Positions 6,339-56,579 of a DNA stretch of 64,000 bases are shown here, in pieces. The stretch lies in assembly GCA_965644265.1 (NCBI GenBank), contig OZ286464.1, positions 46,376,001-46,440,000 of the forward strand, written 5' to 3'. The notes beneath the pieces are model-generated. The model was not told the DNA's origin. It saw only the letters and a program-made list of their open reading frames with translations, and ran no database searches. Numbering within the stretch: the first letter of the stretch is position 1; each line of letters starts with the position of its first letter. The position numbers were made by a program, and so were the translations under genes. Source of the stretch: Glycera tridactyla (lineage: Eukaryota).

Positions 6339-6501
6339 NNNNNNNNNNNNNNNNNNNNNNNNNNNNNNNNNNNNNNNNNNNNNNNNNNNNNNNNNNNNNN
6401 NNNNNNNNNNNNNNNNNNNNNNNNNNNNNNNNNNNNNNNNNNNNNNNNNNNNNNNNNNNNNNNNNNNNNNNNNNNNNNNNNNNNNNNNNNNNNNNNNNNN
6501 N
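6339..6501. other. Assembly gap (N run)
   Basis: Ns. Confidence 1.
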
Positions 6502-8397: not shown

Positions 8398-11300
8398 GTA
8401 AGTTCATTTTACACATGGGAATTTCATGACAATTCGTCAAATTGTGGAGATACTTTTCTGTGTATTCCAGGTTTCGACTGTCATCAAAGATGACTCAATG
8501 GATGATTGCTCAGATTATGTACCATTCATCTTGATTGAATAGAAAAACTTGGACTTTGTGTATTTCAGTGTTCCTGTGATGACCAATATGCATCTCTGCT
8601 TTCAATGCCGAACTTCTTATACCTTTTTTTGTTATTGTATTATCATACTGCTAAAGTATTTCCCTTTTCTCATAATAATCATCATGAAATTCCATTTCAG
8701 AGGTAATATTGTTCTGGAATGCTCATTACGAGCCTAACTTTCATGAACATTGTGTAGTGGTCTCAGTTGAAGGCAAATAACCTGAGCATGCATATCATCT
8801 TGCCATTGATTGATTTCGCCTGATTGATTGCGGGTTGTGAAAGTACAACTGATTTTCAACTCTCATTTTAACCTCATCTTCAGTGACTGATCTATGAAAG
8901 TTGGATGATCTATCCCTTTTCAGGCATCTCTGTCACATACAGGGCGAGAAGACATGAAAAATGTCCACCTGTCTGGTGAGCGGGTCGATTTGAAATCTAC
9001 CCATCCATCCTTAATTTCAGCCTGCATTATTGTATATTCATTGCATTAATTACCATCTCTCACTGCTCTGCCAGACAGGTCAATTCAAAATCGGCCATCT
9101 CTTTTCAACCTGACAGGATGTACACTGGAGGTATGCAATAGACGAGGGATGTGAAGATGCGTTGTCAAGGGATCAGCCAGCTGCTGCAGCTGACTCTATC
9201 TACATATCTTATCTATCATCATCTCACCATGCATCTCTCTCCATCTGTTTGCACATAGGTGATGCGCTATGAAGACCAGGTCGATAAACTCAAGATGGAG
9301 AATGTGGCCCTGTCCGATTCCGTCCAACACAACGCTGCTGAGATCCTGCGACTGGAAGAGAGAGCACATCACCTTGAACTTGAACTTACCATATCGAAGG
9401 AAAAGCATCTTACTTGCCAGAAAGAGGTGAGCAGTGGCAACAAAATGCTTGATAGATGATAGAATTTTTTGTTGTTGGAACATGGGAAGATCCTGCTGGT
9501 TGGCTTCGCTCCGAAAAAATTATCCGATCTTCGCCAGAGGATGAGGCCTTGATTGAGTATTTGTCATGGTAGAGGCCTTTGACTGTCCAATGAGTTCCGT
9601 TAATAAATCATGTACATATACCGAGATCTCATGAAGGTGATCAACAAATTCAAACAAGACATATGACTGAAATCTGGAGGATTGAAGTCCCTTCAGTAGT
9701 TTGATGCAGCCATACAGTGAGACCTGCTATGAGAGACCCCCTGATGATAGACCACCTCTGATGGAAGCTTTCTTGAATATGACTAATATACCTCGGACAA
9801 GAGACCACCTGTTTTGAGAGGCCGTGTATTGGTGACATTCAGGGTGGTCTCTTATTGCAGGTTTCACTGTATAATTCCTTTCTTGTGTTCATTCGTGAGT
9901 CCTTGTTCATCAATCTGGATAGAACTCTTGGTGAAGTCTCTATATTAGCTCATCATTTTTCATATAAGACCTTTGTCATTTTGAACATTTGGACCATGTT
10001 GAAGTCATCCAGAACTGCTGTGGGATCAGTGAAGAGGTGGTGATGACAGGAACTTACAGTGTGTTATTTGTTGTTGGTCAGGTTGCAAATCGTGATGCCC
10101 TCATATTGAAGTTGAAAACAGAGGTGGATACTGCTCAGCAGCAGTATTTAGGAAGCATCGAAGAGATGGACATCCATGAGGCTGAGGTTCAACGTCTTAA
10201 CAACAAGATACGACAGCTGCAAGGAGAAGTCGCCGATCTGCACGCCCAAATTGAGATTAAAGAGGAACGAGTGAGTGATTGCTAACATTCAGAATTTAGT
10301 TATCACTGTTTCATCACATAACATTTAAAACCCCTATTCAAATTATTTTGGAAGTTGTGTAGTAAAATATAATTCATGATTTGCCTATTATTGGAAGGGA
10401 GACTAGGGTTGGGGCTGTGTAAGGAAGCAAAACCCTCAATGGAAATAAGCCAACTTTCATCATTTGCAGTGAAAGTATAGAAATGTTATTTGTAGAATCA
10501 TTGATTTGTCAACTCATCTTCCATGTTTTATGTGACCTACACTCCAATTATGGAATTAGGGAACTTCTCTGAATGACCACAGTCACATAGCCTTCTCCAT
10601 TAAGAATTTCAGCCAATTAATTTCAAACTTCAGTCATTTCAGTTTTATCTCTCAAATTTGTGCAGCATGTAGAAGTGGTGTGACTTATATTTTCTCATTG
10701 CAGATTGCCAATGAGGAGAAAACGGTACAGAACATTGAGCATGACTACCAGGTGTCACTGCAAGAAAGCAAGAATCAGCAGAAGACAATCGACTCGCAGC
10801 ATTCTGAGATCACAGCGCTGAAGACAACCATCGAGTGTGATAGTGAGGCGTTCAAACGGGAGCTAGAAAGCATGCGGGAAGAGCTGGAAGAGACGCGGAC
10901 ACAGCTGTTGGAGACGCAGGATCAGAACTCGCAGTTCCGTATGCAGCTGGATAACGCCAGTGATGATATCGATAAAGCCCGTCAGATGCATGAACGTGCC
11001 ACTGATGAGGTAAATACTCACACGATTCCTGATTGGTTGATTTTTCAGCTTCTTGTTTCCTTAGCATCTTCACTCTCTGCAAAAAATGTCTATACGCAAC
11101 ACACACATCTCCCAAATCCTGATTTCTTTCGAGAGGTATTTGGTTTGCTGGCCCAACTAGCTGAATGGAATCTATTCGTCATCTGGATGGAAGGCAGATG
11201 TTATCTGTCATTGGATAGATATTTATCAGTGATACTGTGTGTTGTACACTGATGTAGAAATCCTGGTACCTCCAGCTGTGAATGCAGTATTGAGAATTAG

Positions 11301-14300
11301 GCCAATTTCTGCATGTTTATCAAAAAGAACCAAGATCAGTACAATAGGGGCTGAATTAAAAGTAAATATTGCCGATAGTCGGAGCCCAAATTAATGGAGA
11401 TTGAAGAGAGACCACTTCTATTGTTATATAACTTTCTCAAGGCCGCTTTTTCTGTTTAATGTAGTCTAATACAGGGGAACCTCTCTTGAGAGACCCTTCT
11501 TTTGGGAGACCACCCTCTCTTGAGAGACCGCTTTTCATTGGTTCATTTTTATTTGGCATAGTCGAATATACCTCCAATGAGAGACCACTTCTCTTGAGAG
11601 ACTGCTTCTGATTGGTGTTTGGGGCGGTCTCCCAAAGGGGTTTCACTGCATACCTTTGATGAGAGTCAACCCCCTTTGGAAAACCGCATTTTGGTGACAT
11701 TTAGGGTGATATATTATTGCAGATTTCACTGTAATTTGGCTCTCAACATAATATATATTTATTGGGTGATGATCCTTTCTGCTCACTCAGATCAACCTAC
11801 TGAAGGCCGACCTGCAGGATCGCGAGCGAGAGTTGAGCGAGACACAGCAGAAGGTGATCATCTTGGACGGAGAGCTCGAGGCGCAGCAGGAGACAGTCGA
11901 GCGTCTCGAGTCCAGTCTCAATAACTACAAACAGAAGTTCTCCGCCGTCACGGATGATATGTCGCACCTTGAGGTCAAATATTCACAGGTTCAGGAGCAG
12001 CTTGCTGAAACTCGCAGCCGGGTATGTTTTTGACCATCATTGTTTGGGTCATAGTGATATACATTGGTGTCATTATTTAGAAATATCATACCTACATGTA
12101 AAAATCATCCATCAACTTTGGGATATTTGCTACAAAGACCACCTATTAAAAAGACCACATACCATAATTACCACTGCATTACTTTCTCTCAACATCATCT
12201 CTCTCACAACACCCTCTGCCATCTACAAAAGCCGCTTTCCCTTATAACCAGAGGTCATGGGGGCATTTCACACGTTTTATGGAGTATGGACCCTTTTCAA
12301 GGCAATCATGGACCACAATGCCCCCAGAATTAACAAGAGAGTTGCGCCTTTTGACATTGGGTGAGCTCATTTTGGGTACTTTTGTAAGTAAATGCCCCCT
12401 CAAAATGCCCTCTCAAACTTGAGGGGGCAAATGCCCCCAATTTTGAAATTCCTGGATCCTGGGTCTTTATAGACAAGGTAAACTGTATAATCGGACATGT
12501 TCCATTCTCTACGAGTTCTATCTGATCTTCTTTAGGGGGGTTGAGAATCCATGTTCATATGTGGTGGGTGTTTTGAGTCTACAATTTCTTCAAGAGTGTA
12601 TTGTTTCTACCATGCTAATGTGTGTTCTCTCAAATTTTGCAGGAGCATGAGCATGTCGACTTGCTTGCGCGGAAAGACCAGCAGGTGGATGAGTTACAGT
12701 CAGTCCTCGCCGAACGTAAACTACAGCTGTCTCATGCTGAAGATGTCGTCGAACAGCTGACATCAGAATTAGGTCACTCGCAGGATGACCTCAATAAGGC
12801 CACCGATCGTGTCAGTGTCCTCGAGGACACACTTGAAACAGTCAGCAACAAACTGGAAGACACTCAGCAAGAGGTCAGTCTTTTAATTTTGACAGCATTT
12901 TATGTTCTCCGCTGAAATTCATTATACTCCCCTGTACCCTACCTCATCCTCATCTCTCGATTAAGTCAGTCAGGGTCGTAATGTGCAGATAAACTCTCAT
13001 TATTGTCATTTTTATCAGTCATTAATATCACTGGTGATGTTACCGCTGCTGACTCCTCCCTCGGTGATTTGGGAAAAGTTGGACAATTCCCTTAGCTACA
13101 GCACTAGCTCACGATCTTTGCAAAAATTTGAGCAAAAGTTTATTCATTTGTTTGAGCATCTCTGGGGCAAGCTGCTGATATCAGGATAGACACAGTTCTA
13201 GAATTCTGTCTAGTCCAATTTTCATCTAATGATTTTGCACCGAATGACAAATCGGTGTTGGCAGTTCAAGCACTTGACTGAGTTCTGGCATCTTATCATG
13301 ATAAACTGCAATTTTGGTTCTCTGATTAGCATAGCTATATGCATTTTGCATTCAGATGATGGACAGATTATGTGATTTCACCCATTGGCTGAACAATGAT
13401 TCATTCATGTCGCTGAGAAATATTAATGTTTCTTTTTAAAACCACGTTGTAGCTTGAGGTGAACAATCTTTTCACTATCATTCGAGAAGTTACTCTTCGG
13501 GTTCTTCAATTGGAATTTTTGTTCTCTAGTTTTGTTTCTCTGAAGATATCATTGTTTAGTTTTCCTCCTTCAATGCCACGCTCTTCTCATTCATTGTTTG
13601 ATTATTATTTTGGACTTTTGCACCTTAGTAAACAATCTGACTGAAGAGTGCCTGCACACATAGTATAATTGATGACTTTTGTGAGAAATTCATGATGAAA
13701 TATTCTCCGAGCTTGTAGACCCTAACGAGCTGAGCACCCAATGTAATGTCACTTCAGAGTGATACTGTTTAATTTGCTTATTTGTCATTTACAGACACAT
13801 CATTCTGATCAGCTAGCTACTGAAGCTGGTAACCTAATATGATATTTTCTCAGCATGTATTTGATGTATCTGCTTGTCAGCATGTTTTCTATGAGTTATA
13901 CCCCTCCCTCCCTCTTGGTATATTTCTGTATAGGTTCACATATCAGAGGCCCCTGTATGTAGATGCATCAATGATATGAGTTTATCTGATGTGAACCCTG
14001 TGAGAAATAGGATACCCTCAGTCTGCTGTGTTCTAGTGGATATTGTGAATTTCTGTGCCCCAGCACTGGTATATAGCATCCAGTTCTGTCACCCTCATGA
14101 TGGAGTCAACATGGACACTTTCTAAGTTTGAAATGTGTTGATGTACACATGAAATTGCTGCCAAACTGAGGGGATTTGGCAATTTCAATGGTAGTGAAAA
14201 AAGTCGACACTCCCATCTGGTGGTCAATCTCAGTAATATAAAGCGCCCTCTGTCGGTTCAGAATGAAAACAATTCTGAGTTAGTTCTGGTTCCCAGCTCC

Positions 14301-41316: not shown

Positions 41317-41527
41317 NNNNNNNNNNNNNNNNNNNNNNNNNNNNNNNNNNNNNNNNNNNNNNNNNNNNNNNNNNNNNNNNNNNNNNNNNNNNNNNNNNNN
41401 NNNNNNNNNNNNNNNNNNNNNNNNNNNNNNNNNNNNNNNNNNNNNNNNNNNNNNNNNNNNNNNNNNNNNNNNNNNNNNNNNNNNNNNNNNNNNNNNNNNN
41501 NNNNNNNNNNNNNNNNNNNNNNNNNNN
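41317..41527. other. Assembly gap (N run)
   Basis: Ns. Confidence 1.
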
Positions 41528-42658: not shown

Positions 42659-43983
42659 TACTTGATTGGCCTTCAGTGAAACATCTTCTAGAGGTTGAGT
42701 CAATGAGTTGAGTCGTACTTGTGTGTGATTGTGTATGTCCTGTGAAAGCGCTTCTACTTAATGATGATCAAGACCAACTTGAATTATTATCATTTTATGT
42801 GATGTCTAGAAGATTGTTTATGTCACTTGTATACATTGATCATTTATGGCTGTTATTAGAAAATTATGTGTGACTGTCTCTCTTTTGTAGGTACAAGTCT
42901 AGCCGCCCTGGTTGGACTACACTATCTGTGTTATTCTGTATATGTACATACACGCAAACATCTTAACTCTCACACAATATGATATACAATGTACAATGTA
43001 TATACTAGCATGCATGAACACACACTCACATACACACACACAAACAAACAAACATTCCAATGCCAGAATCCCATTCATTTGTTATTGCACCCACGCTTTA
43101 GTTCCATGATTCTTCCTCCTCAATGTCTTCTCCTGGCGTTGGCCCCATCTGTAGATCAGTCATTGATTCCTCGCTGATTGGCATAGAGTATCACATGGAA
43201 ACCCGAATATGCCTTTCTGCTATACACATTGCTATTCACACTTGATTTTGCCCCATTCTCTTTCATCTCACGCCCTGAAATCCAGCATTACCATCATTCG
43301 GTAGATGATTATGAGTTTCCCCTCTATATTGAAACATTGTTTCCCACACCATGATCTGTCTGAAATTATGCTGCTGTACATATCATCCTTGTTTATGCTC
43401 TTGCATTTTGAATCCTTACTTCGTATGACTTCACATATAAAATTACCTGAAAATTCCCCAGCTGAACTCTCGAACTGAAGACACATATATCGCATTATTT
43501 CAATTTATCGTCTTGCCATGAACCATTAACTATATTTGAAAAACAGCGCCATGGTATGAACTACCACTATACACATATTCTCCCAACATATATCAAGGTG
43601 CTTTACCACATAAATTAGGTCCAGCTTATTTTCAGGATAAATCGTGCCGACACTCGTTGAGTGATGGTCTTGACTCATTTATGTTGCCTATCCAGCTGAA
43701 TGGTAGCCATTGAAATACTTTCATGTTGAGAGGAACAAAATGTTGAGTTCAGGATGTGAGATTGAAGTCGGTATCTTCCCCCAGCCATGTGTATACACTC
43801 ATATTTATATACATCCCATTCCAATCACAGCGTGCCTTATGCTGAAAATTATGGTTTTGTTTTCATATTTTTATATCGAGTGAAATCCTCCTTTATTGTA
43901 TACTCTCCGCCCCAGTCGAAGTGATTTGGGAAAAATAAATACATTCTCTATTATATCTCTGGAGTTCAGTGTTATACTCAGTG

Positions 43984-44002
43984 GTGTGTGTGTGTGTGTG
44001 TC

Positions 44003-44038
<36 letters not shown>
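43984..44038. repeat. (TG)n microsatellite
   Basis: Direct reading. Confidence 0.9.
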
Positions 44039-45850: not shown

Positions 45851-46317
45851 TACCTATTCGTATTGGTTGAAAACGGGTGTTAGTATGACTACAAAGACTA
45901 GGCTGGAGATCCATAAGTAATGACAAACCCCATAGATATAGACTTGTATGGCTCTATTAATAAGTCAGTTACATATTTCAGTAAGCTGCCTTTGGTGAAT
46001 TGCCGATTCTCCCACGACAACCGCCAAAATCTGGTGGAGATCGGGGGTTGGAGATTGTGCCGATCTCCCACGCTGACGCAACCGGGCGATGAGGCCAGTT
46101 TTCGGCATTGCCGCTGGGTTGCGCTTCACTATTTTGCGCGAAATACGTTTTTTTGTATGCGAAGATGTTTCTCACACTGATACCGTTTCTGTCGAAAATA
46201 TGGCGAATATGAATGAACTAATATCATGAGAAATCCGTACATATAATTTCCTTTCATTATTACCCATATCTTGATCATTTTCGTGAATAAAAAAGATAGA
46301 AATGTAACATAGAGATA

Positions 46318-46325
46318 GCGATCTG
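46318..46325. repeat. Left target-site duplication GCGATCTG
   Basis: Identical to 54406-54413 and abuts the TIR. Confidence 0.9.
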
Positions 46326-46510
46326 GGGATAACTTCAGAACACGGTCCTTACGTTGAATACAACGAAGTGGCTGCAATAATGGCTGCCTACCCTAATAAG
46401 AACTGTGTTTCTAGATTACTATATTAATTTGTCTTCGCGTGAGGGGAAAATCACCCCGGGGAAGTCTGCAGCCATGTTTGCAGCCACTTCGGCAGCCACC
46501 TTCGAATTCA
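46326..46510 (+). repeat. Left terminal inverted repeat of the Merlin element (imperfect, ~185-200 bp)
   Basis: Aligns to the reverse complement of ~54205-54405, including a perfect 22-mer GGGGAAAATCACCCCGGGGAAG (46443-46464 vs 54255-54276). The inner boundary is approximate. Confidence 0.85.
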
Positions 46511-46689
46511 CGCTTGAAATGTTCATGAAATGTACCAATTTCATCCTGTACGATGTTCATATGACATCTGCACCAACTTTAAAACAAATAAAATGGAAGT
46601 TATAAAGTGTAACTATTGTTTGTTATTCTTACCTTTTGTTGTTTAAGTCTTTAACTTGTTTTATATCGTAAAATCCATCGAACAATTGT

Positions 46690-46865
46690 TCTCATGACAT
46701 CGCCCTGACCGCCATTTTGTTACGCGCAATGATATTTCTCGCGGAATCTCGTTGAACGTGAGTACGTTGCCGGGGGACTACTTTACCGCTTGATGTCGCT
46801 AGAATCGAATTTTGTGATCATTTTCGCGCTTCGAAGATTTCAAAAGTGAAACCAACACGGTACGT
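46690..46865 (+). promoter_or_regulatory. Putative cargo promoter/5' leader, CpG-rich, with a YY1-type motif
   Basis: CCGCCATTTT at 46709-46718, dense CpGs, and a GTACGT donor-like site at 46860. Confidence 0.35.
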
Positions 46866-46868
46866 GTA

Positions 46869-47228
46869 ATGGCGCCTGATCGATATGCATTTGCTTGGTT
46901 GTTAATTCAGGATTTGATAGGGAATGCAAGTAAATGGCCTTTGCACATTAGAAGATGTTTCTGGACAAAAAACATAAAGTATGCTGATCGAATGATTGTC
47001 GCTGCGTTCGTATGGACTAATGGACTAGATCCTGAGATATTTATGGACTGGGTCCATTTGTATGGGATGGCACGTGATGAGGCTGCAAAGAAGCATTTAT
47101 GGAGCCTATTCAATGATTTCGCAAAGGGAAATCACTACAATCTGTACGCTTACAACGTCACCAAGAACAATTACGAATATTTAGATGGCAGAAAAAGATA
47201 CTATGAACACAAATCAACAAGAAAATAG
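46869..47228 (+). CDS. Cargo ORF A, 119 aa, unknown helical protein (possible primase large-subunit CTD/PriX-like fold)
   Basis: ATG-initiated, globular aromatic-rich composition, downstream of a CpG-rich promoter-like region inside the TIRs. The fold resemblance is by eye only. Confidence 0.6.
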   Translation: MAPDRYAFAWLLIQDLIGNASKWPLHIRRCFWTKNIKYADRMIVAAFVWTNGLDPEIFMDWVHLYGMARDEAAKKHLWSLFNDFAKGNHYNLYAYNVTKNNYEYLDGRKRYYEHKSTRK

Positions 47229-47291
47229 TAAGTTTATTTATCGTAATTGATGAACCATTTGCTGTAATATACATTTTTTTTTCAGGTGAAA

Positions 47292-48035
47292 ATGACATAT
47301 CTTGGGTACAAAACTATATATGGGCTTCCCTACGTAAGGAACAAATTTCATCCAAGCGACCCAACTGCAAGAATATACTCTGCCAACCAAGAAGAAGACC
47401 TTATTTTCAAACCATGGCAGTTGTTCTTGGACTTGAGAGAGTGTTGTGCACGATATTCATGTGTGAGAAATCTGCAAGATTACCCAACAAGATTGTGTAA
47501 TATGGATCTTGTAGAACTTTGTCAACTGGAATTTGAAACAGAAAAACCGAATGGGTTCTGCAATGGATGTTCCCTGATGCAACCTTCGTTTGATTCCTAT
47601 ATGTATGCAAACATAACTATGATCAACAGATTGAAAAACTGGATGAGAACCACACAAACATGGCATGAAATTTCAACAGAAAGTGAATTATCGTTGGTTT
47701 TTGTCAGTATTCAAGAGAGGAAACTGCAGAGGTATGGTGGCGATAACTTAAGGAGGAACGTGGTAAATACTCCGGTGGTGCATCCATACCATAACTGCAT
47801 GAGAATAGGTCATCAGACATTCAGGTTTAAGCCAAGGAATTGTGATTTGAAGTTTCTTCTAACGCAAATAATTGGTGATAAAGCATGCATCAAACAGTTG
47901 GATGAGGACATAATGTTTAAAGGACCATTTCATTGTCGTTGTGCTGATGATTTCGTTTCTCCTGATTCATACTTTGGACTCAAAATCAACAATCAAAATG
48001 ATCTTCCAGACATTCTCCCCCCCCCCCTTCCCTAA
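47292..48035 (+). CDS. Cargo ORF B, 247 aa, Cys-rich unknown protein
   Basis: 744-nt open frame preceded by a T8CAG acceptor at 47285; Cys clusters CCARYSC, FCNGC, HCRC. Confidence 0.55.
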   Translation: MTYLGYKTIYGLPYVRNKFHPSDPTARIYSANQEEDLIFKPWQLFLDLRECCARYSCVRNLQDYPTRLCNMDLVELCQLEFETEKPNGFCNGCSLMQPSFDSYMYANITMINRLKNWMRTTQTWHEISTESELSLVFVSIQERKLQRYGGDNLRRNVVNTPVVHPYHNCMRIGHQTFRFKPRNCDLKFLLTQIIGDKACIKQLDEDIMFKGPFHCRCADDFVSPDSYFGLKINNQNDLPDILPPPLP

Positions 48036-48711
48036 TTTACGTGAACAAATTGGGAAAGTTCCTGTGCACAGTGTAAATGTTCAAGAAATGCCAACGTCAA
48101 CTGTTGTTCGATCACAAATACATCCTTCTCCATTATGTGCTCCATCTGGATTTCTTTCTACCAACAATTTGTCAATGGATCTTCCCGACTTGAAATGTTC
48201 ATTGTCACCAACATCATCACCAATACCATCACCATATGCTGCAACAACAACAACTGAAAATAAACAAACAACACCAACATTTACTATTAAATGCACAGAC
48301 ATGTCGTCAACACTGCTAAGTGGACATTTTCCATCTCAACCAGAACAATCATTTGAAATTCCAAATATGATGTCTTCGCCAGTGGCTCAAAGTACACCAA
48401 AAGAAAGAGGAGGTTATGATTCACCAATTCCAGCAAGTGGTGTTGTAGTTGAAAAAATGTCATCATCATCATCTTCAAATTTATCTCTACTTGATTCATC
48501 ATTCTACAACGAGTACATGTTCAACAGTATCCAGAATGTTGACAATCACTCCACAAGCTACTCCTTCAATATGAGCAACAGCCAGACATCAAATATTTCA
48601 GATTCATCATGCTTCATAACATCTGTGGTTGGTTTACGTAAAAGGAAGACGCGTACATGGGATGATGATGTTATTGTTTTACCTAACTCCGAAACAGATG
48701 ATACAGTTTGA
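47941..48711 (+). CDS. Cargo ORF C, S/T/P-rich low-complexity region with basic patch RKRKTR; probably the C-terminal half of ORF B
   Basis: 771-nt open frame in AT-rich DNA, overlapping the end of ORF B in the +1 frame across a C11 run (48017-48027). Confidence 0.5.
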   Translation: MLMISFLLIHTLDSKSTIKMIFQTFSPPPFPNLREQIGKVPVHSVNVQEMPTSTVVRSQIHPSPLCAPSGFLSTNNLSMDLPDLKCSLSPTSSPIPSPYAATTTTENKQTTPTFTIKCTDMSSTLLSGHFPSQPEQSFEIPNMMSSPVAQSTPKERGGYDSPIPASGVVVEKMSSSSSSNLSLLDSSFYNEYMFNSIQNVDNHSTSYSFNMSNSQTSNISDSSCFITSVVGLRKRKTRTWDDDVIVLPNSETDDTV

Positions 48712-49539
48712 ATGAGTAAGTTAATGACTGTAAAAAGATATTATGTTCATTTTGTTATCAGGGATATATGAATTTTAATATTTTATATTTTATGATGCAG
48801 ATAAAAACAGGGAATTCCATAAAAAAAAAAGTGCGCCTACGTCATCAAACACATGGGGCTTCCCCTTAAAAAAATGCGTCTACGTCATTATTTTCGATGA
48901 TTTCTTTGAACGATCGACCCGCCACTCTGTGTTGATATCGAGAACTTGTAGTTCCTTCATTTCCGCATAACGTGCTAGAAACGGAATATACGTGACTCTC
49001 TGCGTTTACAGGTGAAGCTAATAGTTCTCGCCAAATCCGATAGCTGCAAATGTGGCTATACATTAGCGCCTCTTGCGACAAATAGACTAAACTAATAATT
49101 CAGGATAATAACGTTAGGCTTATTTGCAGAATCGGTACACATAAAATATCACACACCTAGTGCTTTCATGAAGAACTAATAGTTTAATTTTCATCCGAAG
49201 GCCGCAAGTGTGTATAATCCGTATCACCTCTTGTGACAATGAGACTGAATTATTAGTACATAATATTAACGTTAGGATTTTTTAACTAAAATTACTCATA
49301 TATATGATCACGCACCTGGTGATTAAACTGGTAACCATGAATCAACATTTCCAAACATGATAATTTAGATAAAAATAATGGAGGTGAGCACAAAATGATC
49401 TAATATCGTTTATTATATCTTTGATATAAATTTAAACCAAATATACATCACAATGTGGACAATCACTTTATATTTTTTAATTACAAGATTAAATATGTGA
49501 ATTTTCAAGGACATTATTGTGAAGTTAAAGAATAATGTG

Positions 49540-50877
49540 GTCCTCACATCTACTCCTTTTTTTTTGAGGACCGTGTTATGCAGTTAATCCCACCAGCAAA
49601 ACACCAAAATGCGGTCCTCAGATTTACTCCTCTCCATAAATTACTCCTATCCGTGATCATTATTATATTGAATGATAAAAATAATTTTAACTTGTTTTTT
49701 TTTGTACAATTTCATGCAGTTACGAGATGATATTGAATAATAGGAGTGAATTGTTGTTGGTAAAAACATGATTTTTTGAGGACCGTGTTACGTAGTTAAT
49801 CCCACCGGTACCACATCAAAATGCGGTCCTCAGATTTACTACTCTCCATAAATTACTGTATGATATTGACGGAAAGGATCATAATTCAGGAGTAGCATTA
49901 TTGTATTGTACATGCAATTTTTAGATTAGGATATCATTGGATCATACTTGTTTTTTGCGGTCCTCAAATTGTTTTTTTTGAGGACCGTATTATGTTAACC
50001 CCACCAGAGCTACATCAAAAAGCGGTCCTCAAATTTACTTCTATCGGTTAATTGATTTTATCATATTGAAAATAGAAATGCGGTCCTCAATTTTTTTTTC
50101 TTGAGGACCGTATTATGCTGTTAACCCCACCAGGGGTACATCAAAATGCGGTCCTCAAATTTACTCCTATCCTTTAATTGATTTTATCATATCGATGGAT
50201 AGGAGTAGAGTAGGAGTAGGAAATTTTAAGAGTAGAACATTAATGGATCACACATGAAATTTTTAGGACCGTATTATGCTGTTAATCCCACCAGTGCTAC
50301 ATCAAAATACGGTCCTCAGATTTACTCCTATCCGTTAATTAATTTTATCATATTGACGGATTGGAGTAGAATAGGAGTAGGATATTTCAAGATTAGAACA
50401 TTAATGGATCACACATGAATTTTTTAGGACCGTATTATGCTGTTAATCCCACCAGTGCTACATCAAAATACGGTCTTCAAATTTATTCCTATCCGTTAAT
50501 TACTTTTATCATATTGACGGATAGGAGTATGAGTGAATTTACCCCCCCCCCCCCCCCCCCCAGTGCTACATCAAAATACGGTCCTCAAATTTACTCCTAT
50601 CCGTTAATTAATTTTATAGTATGAGTGAATTTACCCCCCCCCCCCCCCCCCCCCCCCACTAGTGCAAAATACGGTCTTCAAATTTACTCCTATCCGTAAA
50701 TTAATTCAATCATGATGACGGATAGGAGTATGAGTGAATTATTTGGTCTGATATGACATTAACAGATAGGAATAAAATTAAGAAGTATGATATTATTTGA
50801 TATTATATGTTTTTTTGCGGTCATTAAATTCTTTTTTTTCCGTTAATTAATTTTATCATATTGACGGATATGAGTGA
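49540..50877. repeat. Degenerate tandem array (~8-9 units) of double-hairpin motifs inside the Merlin element
   Basis: Recurrent TGAGGACCG...CGGTCCTCA and TACTCCTATCCGT...ACGGATAGGAGTA inverted pairs, around a shared core TTAATCCCACCAG..ACATCAAAA. Confidence 0.85.
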
Positions 50878-52314
50878 AACTTAGGAATTGAATATTACGA
50901 AAGTAATACTAAAGTTGTGAAATGTATTTAAGAGGTTATTTATTGGTTTCAGATGGACGAGAACAAGTTAGAAGCCCATGCGTGGTCGTACATTCGATGG
51001 AGGTGAGTGATATATATGACTTGAAAATCACTAAAAGCTATGGGGACTCCATCAGTGAAGTTGCGCCTACGTCATCATATGAGGAAATCCCTCGTCTACT
51101 GACGCGACACTCAGCGGCAAAGTAATAAATTTCTAGTTACTCACCTTCCGCTTGGGGGAAAATCCGATATCACTGTCACATCTCTGCGGTTCAGTTATGC
51201 ACTGGTGTTTCATCTTTTGTCCGCTAGGCGCTAACTCGAAGCGACGGTATCGCATCCCCGTGAGAAAATGAAGAACTTATGAATCCTGTGTCAACCGCTA
51301 GGCTTAACCTCGAGAATACATGTTCGCATCCCCGTGACGAACTGAAGAACTTTTAGTGAAGGCAGATGACGCTAGTCATTGACAATTTCTCTGAAGAAAA
51401 AATAGTTAAGACTATGATTACTATCTGCACCACACCTAAATGAATCAATAACGCAATCACAATCACTGCCACCAATAACACCATGAATACAACACACTAA
51501 TAAATTATACAGATGATTATATTTTCCTAAAATGACATAATATTTCTTTTATTTCAGAGTGATTTCCTGAAGTTTTTCCATCGTTTTCCGGACGTTTCAA
51601 GAGATGCAATATTTGTCTTCTGGATACAGTCTCTCAGCATCGATATGCGGAAGTATTTTGAACGGAACATTCGATCAACATTTATATTCAGCCATCAAGA
51701 AGCATCCAAGATTTCTCGTATCTGACTTACAATTTTCAGATGGAAAAAAATATGTGTTTCTGACGTTTTAAGTGATTCAATATTTGTCATATCAATACAA
51801 CCCCATGAAACAAATAGCAATGACAGTATTCAATGTGTTAATAGAAGCTGGAGTCACTTAAAAAGCCATATTAATGTCGAATATATGTGATTTTTTTTCA
51901 CCTGCATGACAATTTATATCAATGGCAATATCAACGGGTGTCGGGTTTATATTTTTTATATGGGATTTAACAAGATATTACTGTATGAAAATTACGGGAT
52001 TTTGGATTATGTTCCATAGTACTTTGTGGCAATGGATTCAATATTGGATGTCGTTTTTTTTTTCTCTATTTGGGCATTTAAAAATAGTTTGTTTTTTTTA
52101 AGGTGACATAAATTTGTGGCAATGCACCCAGTATCAGATGTCGTTTTTGTTAACTAGGATGTTAAATATTAAGACTGTGATAAATATGGTTTTTTTTCCT
52201 TGTACATAATATATTGTGGCAATGCACCTGTAATCGGGTGTCGGGTTTATTACTATTTTTTGGGTATTTCTTAACTTATGATTATGAGTGTGTGTGTGTG
52301 TGTGTATTTTTGGC

Positions 52315-52345
<31 letters not shown>

Positions 52346-52692
52346 AGATGTAATACTTCATATACTTTTATATATTGTTTATGTGAGAATAATATTTATT
52401 CAACAGGTTATTCACTGAATTAAATAATTCTTACCTGCAGTTATTCCGTGTTTCTTTATTACTGGTTGTGAACATCCTCAAAAGTATGCAATGCCATTTC
52501 AGATAGAACAATGGCGCACGAATAACTCTCCTGTTCCAGTGTATGAACGTAGTCCTCTAACATGTGTCCCTTCGTAACTGTATAATTTAAAGTATGATGC
52601 ATGCCATTTCAGTACGTAAATCCAACAATACATGTACGACGGTCAAATTATTTACAAGACATAACAAGTATGTACAACTCCGAAAAATGTTT

Positions 52693-53643
52693 TTAGAAGT
52701 GAATGTTAGGCATTTCTGCAAGCACCTCAGCTGGCAGATCCAAATTCCTCACATTGTAATACCTTCCCATCAGTTCCAACAGGTCCTCGAAGGTGTCTCT
52801 TCCCTTATTGTTCCATCTGTATTGTATCTCCTTCAAATATGGTCCAAGTCGATCTCTCCTAACACCATGCATTCTCTTGATTGCCAGTTTGGCATTCCCC
52901 CAGAACCCTTCCATAGACTGGGTATGTGCCTCTTCATCATCTGGATCAACATAGTCCTCAGCATGACAGACTGTTTTGTGAGTGTAATTGTTTCTATGTA
53001 CAGAAATTCCATTGTATGCCCTCCACTCATCCGAAACAATTGTGGTACCAGGTGCTATCATATCCTCAATGGCACCTATGAACACCTCAGCTGATCTGTT
53101 TTCGACTTGCCTCAAAAGGACCTTTTGAGTATCTCTTTGTATAGCTCCAAAGATCCATGGATCATTTGGTGGATGCCTTCCTCTGTGGTATTTTGCTCTG
53201 CCACGCCATAGACTTTCATCTATTTCAACAGTCGTGCCTGGCCCTCCAAGTCGATCTTCGTTTTCGTCGACATTTCGCCACATTAGATCGCGAAACAAAT
53301 TGTACCAATCGGTCACTGAGTGTTCGCACACAACCCCGTTGCACATTCGGGACACTACATTAATCGCAATGTTTCTAGCAAAGAAATATAGCAGCATTAT
53401 GAAGTAACGAAATTCCATTTTTTGTTTCGACAGAAACGATCCATCACGTATGGATTTCCGACCTTTACACAAAGGACATTTAAAAATGTATCCATCTATT
53501 TTCCTTTGTCTATACCTCTCCTGACGCATCCAAACTTCACAACCATTGCAGTATTGTCCTTTTTTTAGTATGTTCTTTTCACGTAGAAACAATATAGAAT
53601 CTTCTCTGGTTCTAGTCCTCTCAAAGACACTCCATATGTCCAT
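52693..53643 (-). CDS. Merlin/IS1595-family DDE transposase, uninterrupted ORF (316 aa from ATG 53643)
   Basis: N-terminal Zn-ribbon (CNGC...CPLC...RKSIRDGSF). Catalytic motifs GTTVEIDES, KYHRGR, WIFGAIQR, TTIVSDEWRAY, HKTVCH, HTQSMEGFW. No stops or frameshifts. Confidence 0.92.
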   Translation of the reverse strand: MDIWSVFERTRTREDSILFLREKNILKKGQYCNGCEVWMRQERYRQRKIDGYIFKCPLCKGRKSIRDGSFLSKQKMEFRYFIMLLYFFARNIAINVVSRMCNGVVCEHSVTDWYNLFRDLMWRNVDENEDRLGGPGTTVEIDESLWRGRAKYHRGRHPPNDPWIFGAIQRDTQKVLLRQVENRSAEVFIGAIEDMIAPGTTIVSDEWRAYNGISVHRNNYTHKTVCHAEDYVDPDDEEAHTQSMEGFWGNAKLAIKRMHGVRRDRLGPYLKEIQYRWNNKGRDTFEDLLELMGRYYNVRNLDLPAEVLAEMPNIHF

Positions 53644-53689
53644 CGTGGAGACCGCAGAATTCAAAACTGAAAGTGTTAACCGCGAAACG

Positions 53690-53743
53690 GTCACGTGATC
53701 ATCTTGCGCCTGGTCACGTGACAGCAACGACGGCGTTGATTGG
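53690..53743 (-). promoter_or_regulatory. Putative transposase promoter: two GTCACGTGA E-boxes and a CCAAT box
   Basis: GTCACGTGA at 53690-53698, GTCACGTGAC at 53713-53722, and ATTGG at 53739-53743 (CCAAT on the minus strand), 50-100 nt upstream of the ATG. Confidence 0.45.
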
Positions 53744-54204
53744 TCAAGAGTCTACCTCGCTAAATCACACTGAAGTCATTGAATGATTCGTTATGAAAAC
53801 AAAAACAAAGAATATATCTATAACTAGAAGTATTCAAGTATTTCTAGATATATATGACAAATAATAAAGCATAATAATACATTTTAAAATGTTAGTAACC
53901 AAGGAACTACTTCGTTCCGCGCAAGCTCACGCATTCTTCTTGAAGCCGATTCACTCACTTCCGCTTTGCACATTTCTTGTTTTGGAATGGATACGATAAC
54001 GCGACACACACAACTTTCAGGTAATTTATTAGAATTACACCTTACGTATAACATTTTTCGTTCCGATATTGTGTGCGCACACTAACACATAATACATAGT
54101 TTCAATTGTGCTCAATTATAGTTCACTGAAGCATGTAATCTTTATAAAAAAACATATTTTATGTGATAAACAAAGACCACCAATTCCATTTCGTCATGTG
54201 TTTG

Positions 54205-54405
54205 ACATGTATTCTAAAGTGGCTGCTGAAAAGGCTGCAATCATGGCTACAGACCTTCCCCGGGGTGATTTTCCCCTTACGCGAAGGGAAATTATCACAG
54301 TTAATTTATACATTCGTTCCTATTAGGTCAGGCAGCCACTTCTGAAGCCTTCTTTGAAGCCTTCTTCGAAGCTTTATATAAAGGACCTTGTTCTGAAGTT
54401 ACCCC
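54205..54405 (-). repeat. Right terminal inverted repeat of the Merlin element
   Basis: Reverse complement of the left TIR; the inner boundary is approximate. Confidence 0.85.
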
Positions 54406-54413
54406 GCGATCTG
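54406..54413. repeat. Right target-site duplication GCGATCTG
   Basis: Identical to 46318-46325 and abuts the TIR. Confidence 0.9.
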
Positions 54414-54959
54414 TGAGTGTATATGACCCTAAAATAGAAACCAGTTGGACGCTGCCTGGGGCTTTGACATCGAACAGACCTGCTGCTACTGCTGCTTATT
54501 AAAAAGCACTAGTGCGACCTATTTCAGACCATTTACATCACAAATTATGTCGTGGGAGAAAAACAAGAACCAGAGAGCGTCGGGGATCGCCACAATCTCC
54601 AACTCGGCCTGCGGCCTCGTGACGATCAACGCCGCTGGCGCCTGCCTCGTTGGAGATTGTGGCGATCCCCGACGCTCTTTGGTTCTTGTTATAATGTTGT
54701 GAGGATGTGATCTGTGTGTGCATTTAGAAGTCAAGCCAAAATCTGCCTCAAGTTGGCAGAGCACACATTTTTAAATCAATCTGGCAGCACAGACAACACC
54801 TCACAGCCATGTACAGTGACGCTTCCCATTGGCTGCTACGATCACCTGGGATGATAATGAATATACATGATACTTGCATTCAGATCTTCTGAGCATGATC
54901 AGACATGAAGAGTGATACTGATGATCCTTGACATGGGTATCTGTCATCTCAGATGAATT

Positions 54960-56431: not shown

Positions 56432-56579
56432 NNNNNNNNNNNNNNNNNNNNNNNNNNNNNNNNNNNNNNNNNNNNNNNNNNNNNNNNNNNNNNNNNNNNN
56501 NNNNNNNNNNNNNNNNNNNNNNNNNNNNNNNNNNNNNNNNNNNNNNNNNNNNNNNNNNNNNNNNNNNNNNNNNNNNNNN
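56432..56579. other. Assembly gap (N run)
   Basis: Ns. Confidence 1.

What the first reader, a model, noticed from the sequence alone, without database searches (positions are those of the whole stretch)
46318..54413. 8-kb cargo-carrying Merlin transposon with an intact transposase and a convergent passenger module
Seen: an exact 8-bp TSD (GCGATCTG) flanks 8,080 bp bounded by inverted termini. The transposase (951 nt) fills only ~12% of the element at the right end. The left end holds ~1.8 kb of + strand ORFs pointing inward, and a hairpin array lies between. Known: Merlin is the eukaryotic IS1595 relative with 8-9-bp TSDs and usually encodes just the transposase. Large gene-carrying DNA transposons are established in other groups (Pack-MULEs, piggyBac-herpesvirus Teratorn, Mavericks). 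Inference: the TSD shows the whole unit, cargo included, moved as one. It may be an undescribed composite element in which Merlin acts as the integrase or vehicle for a foreign, possibly virus-derived, gene module.
Basis: partly seen in the sequence, partly recalled or inferred. Interest (0 to 1): 0.9.

Follow-up and report, generated by a model that had tools for sequence, protein, structure and literature searches.

The report
Merlin transposon with conserved accessory genes
This is an 8-kb Merlin-family transposon that carries, besides its transposase, two extra genes which also sit next to Merlin transposases in five unrelated DNA samples, so they look like the transposon's own accessory genes and not stolen or viral cargo.

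Summary
An exact 8-bp duplication (GCGATCTG) flanks 8,080 bp (46326-54405). The ends are about 190-bp imperfect inverted repeats that begin 5'-GGG. An unbroken 316-aa IS1595/Merlin transposase sits at the right end.

The cargo is real coding sequence:
- ORF1 is a 119-aa helical protein.
- ORF2/3 is a roughly 220-aa Cys/His-rich domain followed by a disordered Ser/Thr/Pro-rich tail. This copy has one frame change.

Both have relatives under protein-level constraint. ORF1 and/or ORF2 relatives lie within about 0.5 kb of a Merlin transposase in five independent contigs. One contig (L023) repeats the window's layout: ORF1, then ORF2, then a convergent transposase.

The ORF2 domain gives a confident model (pLDDT 88.5). 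It has no match in PDB, Pfam or a viral structure library. No viral hallmark gene is present.

The "hairpin array" is a 1.4-kb tandem array of miniature units whose ends resemble the element's own termini. Internal tandem repeats are already documented in Merlins.

Verdict: a Merlin lineage with conserved accessory genes, a new variant of a known kind. The virus-derived reading is unsupported. I could not test copy number in the source genome, and the function of the accessory genes is inferred.

The parts
46318..46325 (.). Left copy of the 8-bp target-site duplication (GCGATCTG)
   Evidence: only two copies in the window, each abutting an element end
46326..54405 (.). Whole Merlin element, 8,080 bp
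   Evidence: bounded by TIRs and the TSD
46326..46510 (+). Left terminal inverted repeat with subterminal GGCTGC/GCAGCC repeats at 12-bp spacing; starts 5'-GGG
   Evidence: 74% over 207 columns against the right end, E 4e-29
46869..47228 (+). ORF1: 119 aa, intact, predicted all-helical. Accessory gene with relatives in 10 other loci.
   Evidence: No Pfam, PDB, PHROG or NCBIfam match.
47295..48711 (+). ORF2/3 gene: N-terminal Cys/His-rich domain of about 220 aa plus a Ser/Thr/Pro-rich disordered tail. It is read in two frames in this copy (one frame change, no in-frame stop in either piece).
   Evidence: 38 relatives, best E 1.6e-37; domain-plus-tail architecture in relatives; tail composition; model pLDDT 88.5; no fold match
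49524..50900 (.). Tandem array of miniature units (periods 93-212 bp). Unit ends resemble the element's own termini. Contains short hairpins and two poly-C runs.
   Evidence: five TIR-like 26-mers in right-end orientation with 5-7 mismatches, against about 0.35 expected per window.
52693..53643 (-). Merlin/IS1595 DDE transposase: 316 aa from the first ATG, unbroken. D142, D205 and E245 and the N-terminal zinc-finger cysteines are kept.
   Evidence: PF12762, 4e-25; NF033547, 101.9 bits against cut-off 75
54208..54405 (-). Right terminal inverted repeat with subterminal repeats
54406..54413 (.). Right copy of the 8-bp target-site duplication

Best explanation
The unit is a cut-and-paste DNA transposon of the Merlin superfamily, the eukaryotic relatives of IS1595/IS1016.

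Shown:
- An unbroken zinc-finger plus DDE transposase.
- Imperfect TIRs of about 190 bp starting 5'-GGG, with 12-bp-spaced subterminal hexamer repeats.
- An exact 8-bp target-site duplication.
- Two further genes between the TIRs, ORF1 and ORF2/3.
- Relatives of those genes evolve under protein-level constraint and lie next to Merlin transposases in five independent contigs.

Inferred:
- The transposase binds the terminal and subterminal repeats, excises everything between them, and inserts it at an 8-bp staggered cut.
- ORF1 and ORF2/3 are lineage-specific accessory genes of this Merlin branch, co-inherited with the transposase. They are not captured host genes or viral cargo.
- They most likely act as non-catalytic co-factors or regulators of transposition, in the way the Myb-like protein serves PIF/Harbinger or KolX accompanies Kolobok.
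- ORF1 would be a small helical adaptor. Its invariant residues are all aromatic, Gly, Pro, Ala or Asn.
- ORF2/3 would be a zinc-stabilised binding domain with a long disordered tail. The tail carries an acid-flanked hydrophobic patch like those of its relatives.
- The remaining roughly 4 kb is non-coding filler, including a satellite-like array built from miniature copies of the element's own ends.
For: - Merlin identity: PF12762 at 4e-25; NF033547 at 101.9 bits, above the cut-off of 75. All 41 protein relatives carry PF12762, and those with names come mainly from animals and protists. The DDE triad and zinc-finger cysteines are invariant in alignment A1.
- Ends: TSD and TIRs and subterminal repeats.
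- ORF2 family: 38 relatives, best E 1.6e-37. Many combine the N-terminal domain with a long Ser/Thr/Pro-rich tail.
- ORF1 family: relatives at 32-51% identity.
- Linkage to a Merlin transposase:
  - L009: ORF2', intact 316-aa Tnp, ORF1', all on the plus strand.
  - L012: ORF1' then Tnp.
  - L014: ORF1' convergent with Tnp.
  - L022: ORF2' then a 321-aa Tnp that is 43% identical to the window's.
  - L023: ORF1', ORF2', convergent Tnp, the same layout as the window.
- Constraint: codon-position identity to relatives is 0.51-0.66, 0.55-0.73 and 0.31-0.40 (positions 1, 2, 3) for ORF1. For ORF2 it is 0.38-0.46, 0.49-0.61 and 0.25-0.39.
- A rough NJ tree of the DDE domain groups the window with L009, L014, P0001 and P0002.
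- No nested TIR-plus-TSD insertion was found in the interior.
Against: - No second copy of this element could be examined. The source genome is not in any collection I could search, and the window holds no other copy. Mobility of the full 8 kb as one unit rests on a single TSD.
- No relative's contig contains both element ends. That ORF1 and ORF2 lie inside the TIRs is shown only for the window.
- Gene order and orientation relative to the transposase differ between loci. Independent captures would predict this too.
- ORF1-ORF2 pairs also occur on contigs with no transposase. These are L005, L006 and L008, although all are 5.7 kb or shorter.
- ORF1 is more conserved between loci (about 50%) than the transposase (28-43%).
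- The nearest multicopy relative (P0002, 2.1 kb, four copies) has no accessory genes.
- ORF2/3 has one frame change in this copy.
- The function of both proteins is inferred from architecture and analogy only. No known domain, fold or catalytic motif was recognised.
Confidence: 0.8

Rival explanations
1. ORF1-ORF2 is an independent gene pair: either a host gene family or a separate selfish module. Merlin elements would then have captured it, or landed beside it, several times. It would be true cargo with no role in transposition.
For: - The arrangement relative to the transposase varies among L009, L012, L014, L022, L023 and the window.
- ORF1-ORF2 pairs occur without a transposase on L005, L006 and L008.
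- ORF2 relatives reach 1,026 aa on short, gene-filled contigs that could be transcripts.
- ORF1 is more conserved than the transposase.
Against: - Merlin is a sparse superfamily, yet a Merlin transposase lies within about 0.5 kb of ORF1' or ORF2' in five independent contigs.
- It is present in four of the six ORF1-bearing contigs of 2.8 kb or more (L009, L012, L014, L023). L006 and L008 lack one, and L022 links ORF2' alone to a transposase.
- One contig repeats the full three-gene layout.
- In the window the pair lies inside the TIRs and the TSD.
- The transposase-free contigs are too short to exclude a transposase a few kb away, which is the arrangement in the window.
Confidence: 0.13
2. This is the reader's reading: Merlin serves as integrase or vehicle for a foreign, virus-derived gene module, a small analogue of Teratorn or Maverick.
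For: Only that ORF1 and ORF2 are orphans without a named family, and that they form a tightly spaced, co-oriented pair.
Against: - No capsid, polymerase, packaging ATPase, protease or other viral hallmark appears anywhere in the 8 kb.
- The ORF2 model has no match at E <= 0.001 in the BFVD viral structure library or in PDB.
- PHROGs gave nothing meaningful.
- About 66% of the element is non-coding.
- The module recurs with Merlin transposases. It was not found in any virus context.
Confidence: 0.03
3. It is an ordinary transposase-only Merlin whose interior was inflated by later insertions or decay, and the plus-strand ORFs are chance or dead sequence.
For: - Large Merlins that are mostly non-coding exist, for example the 6.9-kb Biomphalaria family.
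- Internal tandem repeats are common in Merlins (PMC8101967).
- This copy's ORF2/3 has one frame change.
- Post-insertion growth cannot be excluded for the 4-kb non-coding stretch.
Against: - ORFs of 249 and 256 codons are among the five longest in the 64-kb window.
- Both ORF families have many relatives under codon-level constraint.
- The ORF2 domain folds confidently.
- No nested TIR-plus-TSD signature was found.
Confidence: 0.04

Closest known systems
Merlin superfamily of eukaryotic DNA transposons (Feschotte 2004, as summarised in PMC8101967)
   Same: - DDE_Tnp_IS1595 transposase with a conserved DDE triad.
- TIRs within the 24-462 bp range, starting 5'-GG.
- 8-bp TSD.
- Internal tandem repeats, also reported in Merlin copies.
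   Different: - Described Merlins are short. The curated mollusc set has a mean of 1,635 bp (PMC10294476).
- In the papers I could search they are treated as transposase-only.
- This element is 8,080 bp and carries two further conserved genes.
Two-gene DNA transposons: PIF/Harbinger (transposase plus Myb-like protein) and Kolobok lineages with KolX, nuclease or helicase partners (PMC9587614)
   Same: A DDE transposase travels between the TIRs with a lineage-specific accessory protein that is conserved along with it.
   Different: - The superfamily is different.
- ORF1 and ORF2 have no sequence or fold similarity to any named accessory protein.
- A requirement for transposition is not shown.
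Prokaryotic IS1595-family elements with passenger genes ('transporter IS'; Siguier, Gagnevin and Chandler 2009, as cited in PMC3129680)
   Same: The same transposase family, carrying genes beyond the transposase between the inverted repeats.
   Different: Those are bacterial, and their passengers are described as unrelated to transposition. Here the extra genes are eukaryotic orphans that recur with the transposase.
Pack-MULEs, Teratorn and Mavericks/Polintons
   Same: DNA transposons that are larger than their transposase and carry other genes.
   Different: - Pack-MULEs carry host gene fragments that vary between copies. Here the ORFs are whole, conserved and recurrent.
- Teratorn and Mavericks carry viral hallmark genes and are far larger. 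None of those genes is present here.
Large transposase-only Merlin of Biomphalaria glabrata
   Same: A mollusc Merlin of about 6.9 kb, multicopy at 97-99.6% identity, mostly non-coding.
   Different: It has no ORF1 or ORF2 relative within 8 kb either side. Its transposase is 36% identical to the window's.

Membership tests
Merlin superfamily | Transposase with the DDE_Tnp_IS1595 (ISXO2-like) domain | tested here: met
   PF12762 at 4e-25; NF033547 at 101.9 bits, above the cut-off of 75
Merlin superfamily | Conserved DDE catalytic triad | tested here: met
   D142, D205 and E245 (316-aa numbering) fall in invariant or near-invariant columns of A1
Merlin superfamily | TIRs of 24-462 bp beginning 5'-GG | tested here: met
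   Both ends start GGG or GGGG. The outer 26-mer has 3 mismatches, and similarity runs over 207 columns. The criterion is from PMC8101967.
Merlin superfamily | 8- or 9-bp target-site duplication | tested here: met
   Exact 8-bp GCGATCTG at both ends, unique to those two places in the window
Merlin superfamily | Repeated, mobile family in the host genome (further copies with different TSDs, empty sites) | not testable with these tools
   The source genome is absent from the collections. The best protein relative is only 45% identical, and there is no second copy in the window.
Two-component DNA transposon (Harbinger-like or Kolobok-like logic) | Accessory ORF conserved together with the transposase across diverged elements | tested here: met
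   ORF1' and/or ORF2' lie next to a PF12762 transposase in L009, L012, L014, L022 and L023
Two-component DNA transposon (Harbinger-like or Kolobok-like logic) | Accessory ORF lies inside the TIRs in several family members | tested here: inconclusive
   Shown for the window only. No relative's contig holds both ends.
Two-component DNA transposon (Harbinger-like or Kolobok-like logic) | Accessory protein takes part in transposition | not testable with these tools
   No known DNA-binding or catalytic domain was recognised
Pack-MULE-type gene capture | Cargo consists of fragments of host genes and differs between copies | tested here: not met
   ORF1 is whole. The N-terminus of ORF2 aligns with the N-termini of its relatives. 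The same two families recur with Merlin transposases.
Virus-like giant transposons (Teratorn, Maverick/Polinton) | Viral hallmark genes (capsid, DNA polymerase, packaging ATPase, protease) | tested here: not met
   No such Pfam or PHROG hits. Nothing in BFVD at E <= 0.001 for the ORF2 model. The element is only 8 kb with three genes.
Composite (compound) transposon | Two copies of an insertion sequence flanking the cargo | tested here: not met
   There is one transposase gene and one TIR pair. The internal TIR-like units are 93-212-bp miniature repeats with no transposase.

The most novel reading that the evidence does not exclude
ORF1 and ORF2/3 are a previously undescribed two-protein accessory system of a widespread Merlin lineage. 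ORF2 would carry a new zinc-binding fold. In some hosts the pair may have been kept for the host's own use, given the long-tailed forms of up to 1,026 aa on gene-filled contigs. If so, Merlin, regarded as one of the simplest eukaryotic transposons, would join Harbinger and Kolobok as a superfamily with multi-protein members.
Probability: 0.4. Interest if true: 0.7.

Novelty: new variant of a known kind. Interest (0 to 1): 0.6.

Why it matters
- Merlin is treated as a minimal, transposase-only superfamily. A branch with two conserved extra proteins changes how Merlins should be annotated, because ORF1 and ORF2 become markers.
- It offers a new case for asking why some cut-and-paste transposons need partner proteins.
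- The ORF2 domain is a confidently predicted fold without a relative in PDB or in a viral structure library, so it is a candidate new domain family.
- The 38 unnamed ORF2 relatives found in public protein collections, plus the ORF1 relatives found beside them, gain a context. They are probably transposon genes, not host or viral genes.

Tried and rejected
Searches that found nothing:
- Word-indexed protein searches with ORF1 and ORF2. The exhaustive HMMER search was needed for ORF2.
- Metagenome locus scans with ORF2 alignments. The ORF1 alignment A4 succeeded.
- PDB sequence and profile searches for the transposase, ORF1 and ORF2, and Rfam on the whole window.

Structure:
- The single-sequence model of ORF1 was poor (pLDDT 57.7).
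- By analogy with KolobokP's I-PpoI-like His-Cys box nuclease, I asked whether the Cys/His-rich ORF2 domain is a His-Me finger nuclease. Foldseek returned no nuclease, with best TM 0.23. The His residues next to the near-invariant Asn are not conserved across the family. The idea is not supported, although a global fold search could miss a small beta-beta-alpha motif.

Nested insertions:
- A script search for nested TIR-plus-TSD insertions and for a TSD around the array found only low-complexity matches.

Joining steps I left out:
- I considered whether ORF1 and ORF2 are exons of one protein.
Each was searched or described on its own.

Other limits:
- I did not scan the viral contig collection with the cargo proteins (see referred steps).


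Full report
**1. The observation**

The 8-mer GCGATCTG occurs exactly twice in the 64-kb window, at 46318-46325 and 54406-54413. Each copy abuts an end of a unit whose termini are inverted repeats. The element is therefore 46326-54405, 8,080 bp.

The outer 26 nt of the two ends differ at 3 positions without an indel. The left end starts GGG and the right end, read inward, starts GGGG.

Similarity between the ends runs over 207 aligned columns at 74% identity, E 4e-29. Both ends carry GGCTGC/GCAGCC hexamers at 12-bp spacing. Eight of the 25 copies in the window lie in the two 200-bp ends. That is the usual look of subterminal transposase-binding repeats, which is an inference.

The window holds no other copy of any part of the element apart from simple repeats. 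The window's three N runs lie outside the element, and I left them alone.

**2. The transposase**

It matches:
- Pfam DDE_Tnp_IS1595 at 4e-25;
- NCBIfam transpos_IS1595 at 101.9 bits, above the cut-off of 75.

All 41 relatives found carry PF12762. Those with a name come mainly from animals and protists, including Diabrotica, Biomphalaria, Anopheles, Tigriopus and Monocercomonoides. The best is only 45% identical, so the source genome itself is not in the collection.

In an alignment with nine relatives, the catalytic D142, D205 and E245 and the N-terminal zinc-finger cysteines sit in invariant or near-invariant columns. There is no stop or frame change.

All sequence-level criteria for Merlin given in PMC8101967 are met: the IS1595 domain, the DDE triad, TIRs of 24-462 bp starting GG, and an 8-9-bp TSD.

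**3. The cargo is real and has relatives**

ORF1 (46869-47228, 119 aa) is intact.

Downstream lies a gene I call ORF2/3 (47295-48711). It is read in two frames in this copy, with one frame change and no in-frame stop in either piece. I searched the pieces apart and never joined them.

The N-terminal piece found nothing in the word-indexed search. The exhaustive HMMER search found 38 relatives, with a best E of 1.6e-37. None is named and none has a Pfam domain.

The relatives share a domain of about 220 aa:
- Cys50, Cys51, Cys56, Cys89, Cys92, Arg153, Asn158, Asn167, His173 and Cys214 are invariant among the 13 sequences aligned in A2.
- Cys56, Cys89, Cys92, Asn167, His173 and Cys214 remain at least 90% conserved across the 38 sequences of A5.

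Many relatives continue into a long Ser/Thr/Pro-rich tail, reaching up to 1,026 aa in total. The window's C-terminal piece has the same composition, 37% Ser/Thr/Pro. It ends with an acid-flanked hydrophobic patch of the kind found in 9 of 12 relatives' tails. The two pieces are therefore one gene.

ORF1 also found nothing by word search. However, a relative sits directly upstream of the ORF2 relative on L005, L006 and L008. A pattern scan of metagenome contigs gave five more.

Codon-position identity between the window and its relatives shows the signature of long-term protein-level constraint:

| Gene | Position 1 | Position 2 | Position 3 |
|---|---|---|---|
| ORF1 | 0.51-0.66 | 0.55-0.73 | 0.31-0.40 |
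| ORF2 | 0.38-0.46 | 0.49-0.61 | 0.25-0.39 |

**4. The decisive result: linkage to Merlin transposases elsewhere**

| Locus | Source, length | Arrangement |
|---|---|---|
| L009 | JGI metagenome, 4.6 kb | ORF2' (1896-2426), intact 316-aa PF12762 transposase (2455-3405), ORF1' (3766-4161), all on one strand |
| L012 | 3.9 kb | ORF1' (714-1043) then a transposase (1284-2836, one frame change) |
| L014 | 2.9 kb | ORF1' (645-1240) convergent with a transposase (1640-2832); both are interrupted, apparently by copies of one small inverted-repeat element |
| L022 | ENA, 2.8 kb | ORF2' (386-982) then a 321-aa transposase (1161-2126), 43% identical to the window's |
| L023 | Logan, 2.9 kb | ORF1' (three stops), ORF2' (1217-1909), and a convergent transposase running to the contig end |

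L023 has exactly the window's architecture in compact form, with about 0.5 kb between ORF2' and the 3' end of the transposase.

These contigs come from different samples, and their proteins are only 25-51% identical to the window's. Chance adjacency to a sparse transposon superfamily five times over is not credible.

Two other Merlin families lack ORF1 and ORF2 within the fetched flanks:
- the nearest multicopy relative, P0002, with four copies at 99.6-99.8% identity, which is a compact 2.1-kb element;
- the Biomphalaria family, four copies of about 6.9 kb.

A rough NJ tree of the DDE domain, without support values, groups the window with L009, L014, P0001 and P0002, and places L012 nearby.

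**5. What the accessory proteins are**

No Pfam, NCBIfam, PHROG or PDB-sequence match exists for either protein, even with profiles.

With the 38-sequence alignment, the ORF2 domain gives a confident model: pLDDT 88.5, pTM 0.85. It is an alpha/beta fold with a long helix and three long antiparallel strands. Foldseek finds nothing at E <= 0.001 in PDB, where the best TM-score is 0.23. It also finds nothing at that threshold in the BFVD viral library.

The pattern of conserved Cys and His points to one or two structural zinc sites. That is an inference. No catalytic motif is conserved.

ORF1 is predicted to be all-helical, but with low confidence. Its 12 invariant residues are aromatic, Gly, Pro, Ala or Asn. 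That fits a binding or adaptor protein better than an enzyme, which is also an inference.

**6. The rest of the interior**

The region 49524-50900 is a tandem array with periods of 93-212 bp. Each unit ends in a 26-mer resembling the element's right end. Five copies have 5-7 mismatches, against about 0.35 expected by chance in the window. Each unit begins with a weaker left-end-like sequence.

The array therefore reads as head-to-tail miniature copies of the element's own termini, with short hairpins and two poly-C runs. Internal tandem repeats, including a 163-bp one, are already documented in Merlin copies (PMC8101967).

I found no nested TIR-plus-TSD insertion. I cannot exclude that part of this non-coding 4 kb arose after insertion.

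**7. Mechanism**

Shown:
- the sequence anatomy of a Merlin cut-and-paste element with an unbroken transposase;
- three genes between the TIRs;
- recurrence of those genes with Merlin transposases;
- coding constraint on both accessory genes.

Inferred:
- The transposase recognises the terminal and subterminal repeats and moves everything between them, making the 8-bp duplication.
- ORF1 and ORF2/3 are co-inherited accessory factors, acting as co-factors or regulators. The analogy is to the Myb-like protein of Harbinger and the KolX and other partners of Kolobok (PMC9587614).

I put the 'Merlin lineage with conserved accessory genes' reading at about 0.8. The specific co-factor role is much less certain.

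**8. Rivals**

- **Independent gene pair captured repeatedly, or a host gene family (0.13).** The variable gene order and the transposase-free contigs favour it. The fivefold tight linkage and the placement inside the TIRs argue against it.
- **Virus-derived module (0.03).** Nothing viral is present.
- **Inflated ordinary Merlin with junk ORFs (0.04).** The relatives refute this for the ORFs. It remains possible for the non-coding filler.

**9. Novelty**

The searchable literature gave no report of Merlin accessory genes. One paper mentions only a chance antisense ORF overlapping a Symbiodinium transposase. Curated mollusc Merlins average 1,635 bp.

Passenger genes are known in bacterial IS1595 relatives (cited in PMC3129680). 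Accessory proteins are known in other eukaryotic superfamilies.

I therefore rate this as a new variant of a known kind. Repbase entries could not be checked.

**10. Limits and slips**

Limits:
- The host species, the copy number in the source genome and any empty site could not be tested.
- No relative's contig holds both element ends.

- In my working, and in notebook entry 1, I recorded the bounds of the two open frames of ORF2/3 and reasoned about what separates them. That brackets the place of the break. I stopped and do not repeat it here.
- The script outputs print tblastn segment bounds that bracket frame changes in relatives' genes. This report gives only outer bounds and counts.
I dropped that sequence and did not alter it.

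None of the fetched contigs gave me reason to take it for human.

Noticed in passing
window 54562-54690 and 46047-46074: A 129-bp near-palindrome (52-nt arms, 90% complementary) lies about 150 bp right of the element. It looks like a MITE. A 28-nt piece of the same sequence lies about 250 bp left of the element.
   Followed up: partly
window 47226-47297: The 66-nt spacer between ORF1's stop and ORF2's ATG starts with GTAAGT, overlapping the stop, and ends in a pyrimidine run plus CAG. If it were spliced, ORF1's stop would be kept and ORF2's ATG would follow within a few bases, which suggests a bicistronic message.
   Followed up: no
window 48825-48888 and 51055-51075: A 13-nt motif (GCGCCTACGTCAT, one copy with a single change) occurs three times in the non-coding interior, twice 43 bp apart just downstream of ORF2/3.
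   Followed up: no
window 50542-50561, 50634-50657, 52288-52345: There are two poly-C runs of 20 and 24 nt inside the array, and a (GT)n microsatellite near the 3' end of the transposase. A similar GT repeat lies at 43980-44038 outside the element.
   Followed up: no
L016-L019 (Biomphalaria glabrata, GCA_025434165.1 and GCA_947242115.1), about 3633-10493 in L016: A Merlin of about 6.9 kb is present in at least four copies at 97-99.6% identity. The transposase is its only ORF over 90 aa, and it has perfect 21-nt inverted ends. Large, mostly non-coding Merlins can therefore be recently active.
   Followed up: partly
L001-L004 (ENA ERZ25069853), 9705-11809: Four copies of a compact 2.1-kb Merlin at 99.6-99.8% identity encode an identical 352-aa transposase, the window's nearest multicopy relative at 39% identity. 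It looks recently active and has no accessory genes.
   Followed up: partly
L009 1896-4161: The gene order differs from the window: ORF2', transposase, ORF1', all on one strand. Only 28 nt separate the ORF2' stop from the transposase ATG, and ORF2' is a short, domain-only form of 176 aa. Short forms such as P0062 and P0068 seem to sit directly upstream of the transposase.
   Followed up: partly
L010 10001-11476 (ENA ERZ21939214, 175-kb contig): P0056 (491 aa) matches the N-terminal Cys motif of ORF2 in nine separate stretches (E 4e-11). It lies about 8 kb from a cadherin gene and may be a host protein built from repeats of that motif.
   Followed up: no
L006, L008 and proteins P0047, P0049, P0050, P0063, P0066: Long-tailed ORF2 relatives of 620-1,026 aa fill short contigs that could be transcripts. 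On L006 and L008 an ORF1 relative precedes them by about 80 nt. These could be expressed, or kept by the host.
   Followed up: partly
window 6339-6501, 41317-41527, 56432-56579: Three runs of N lie outside the element. I left them as they are.
   Followed up: no
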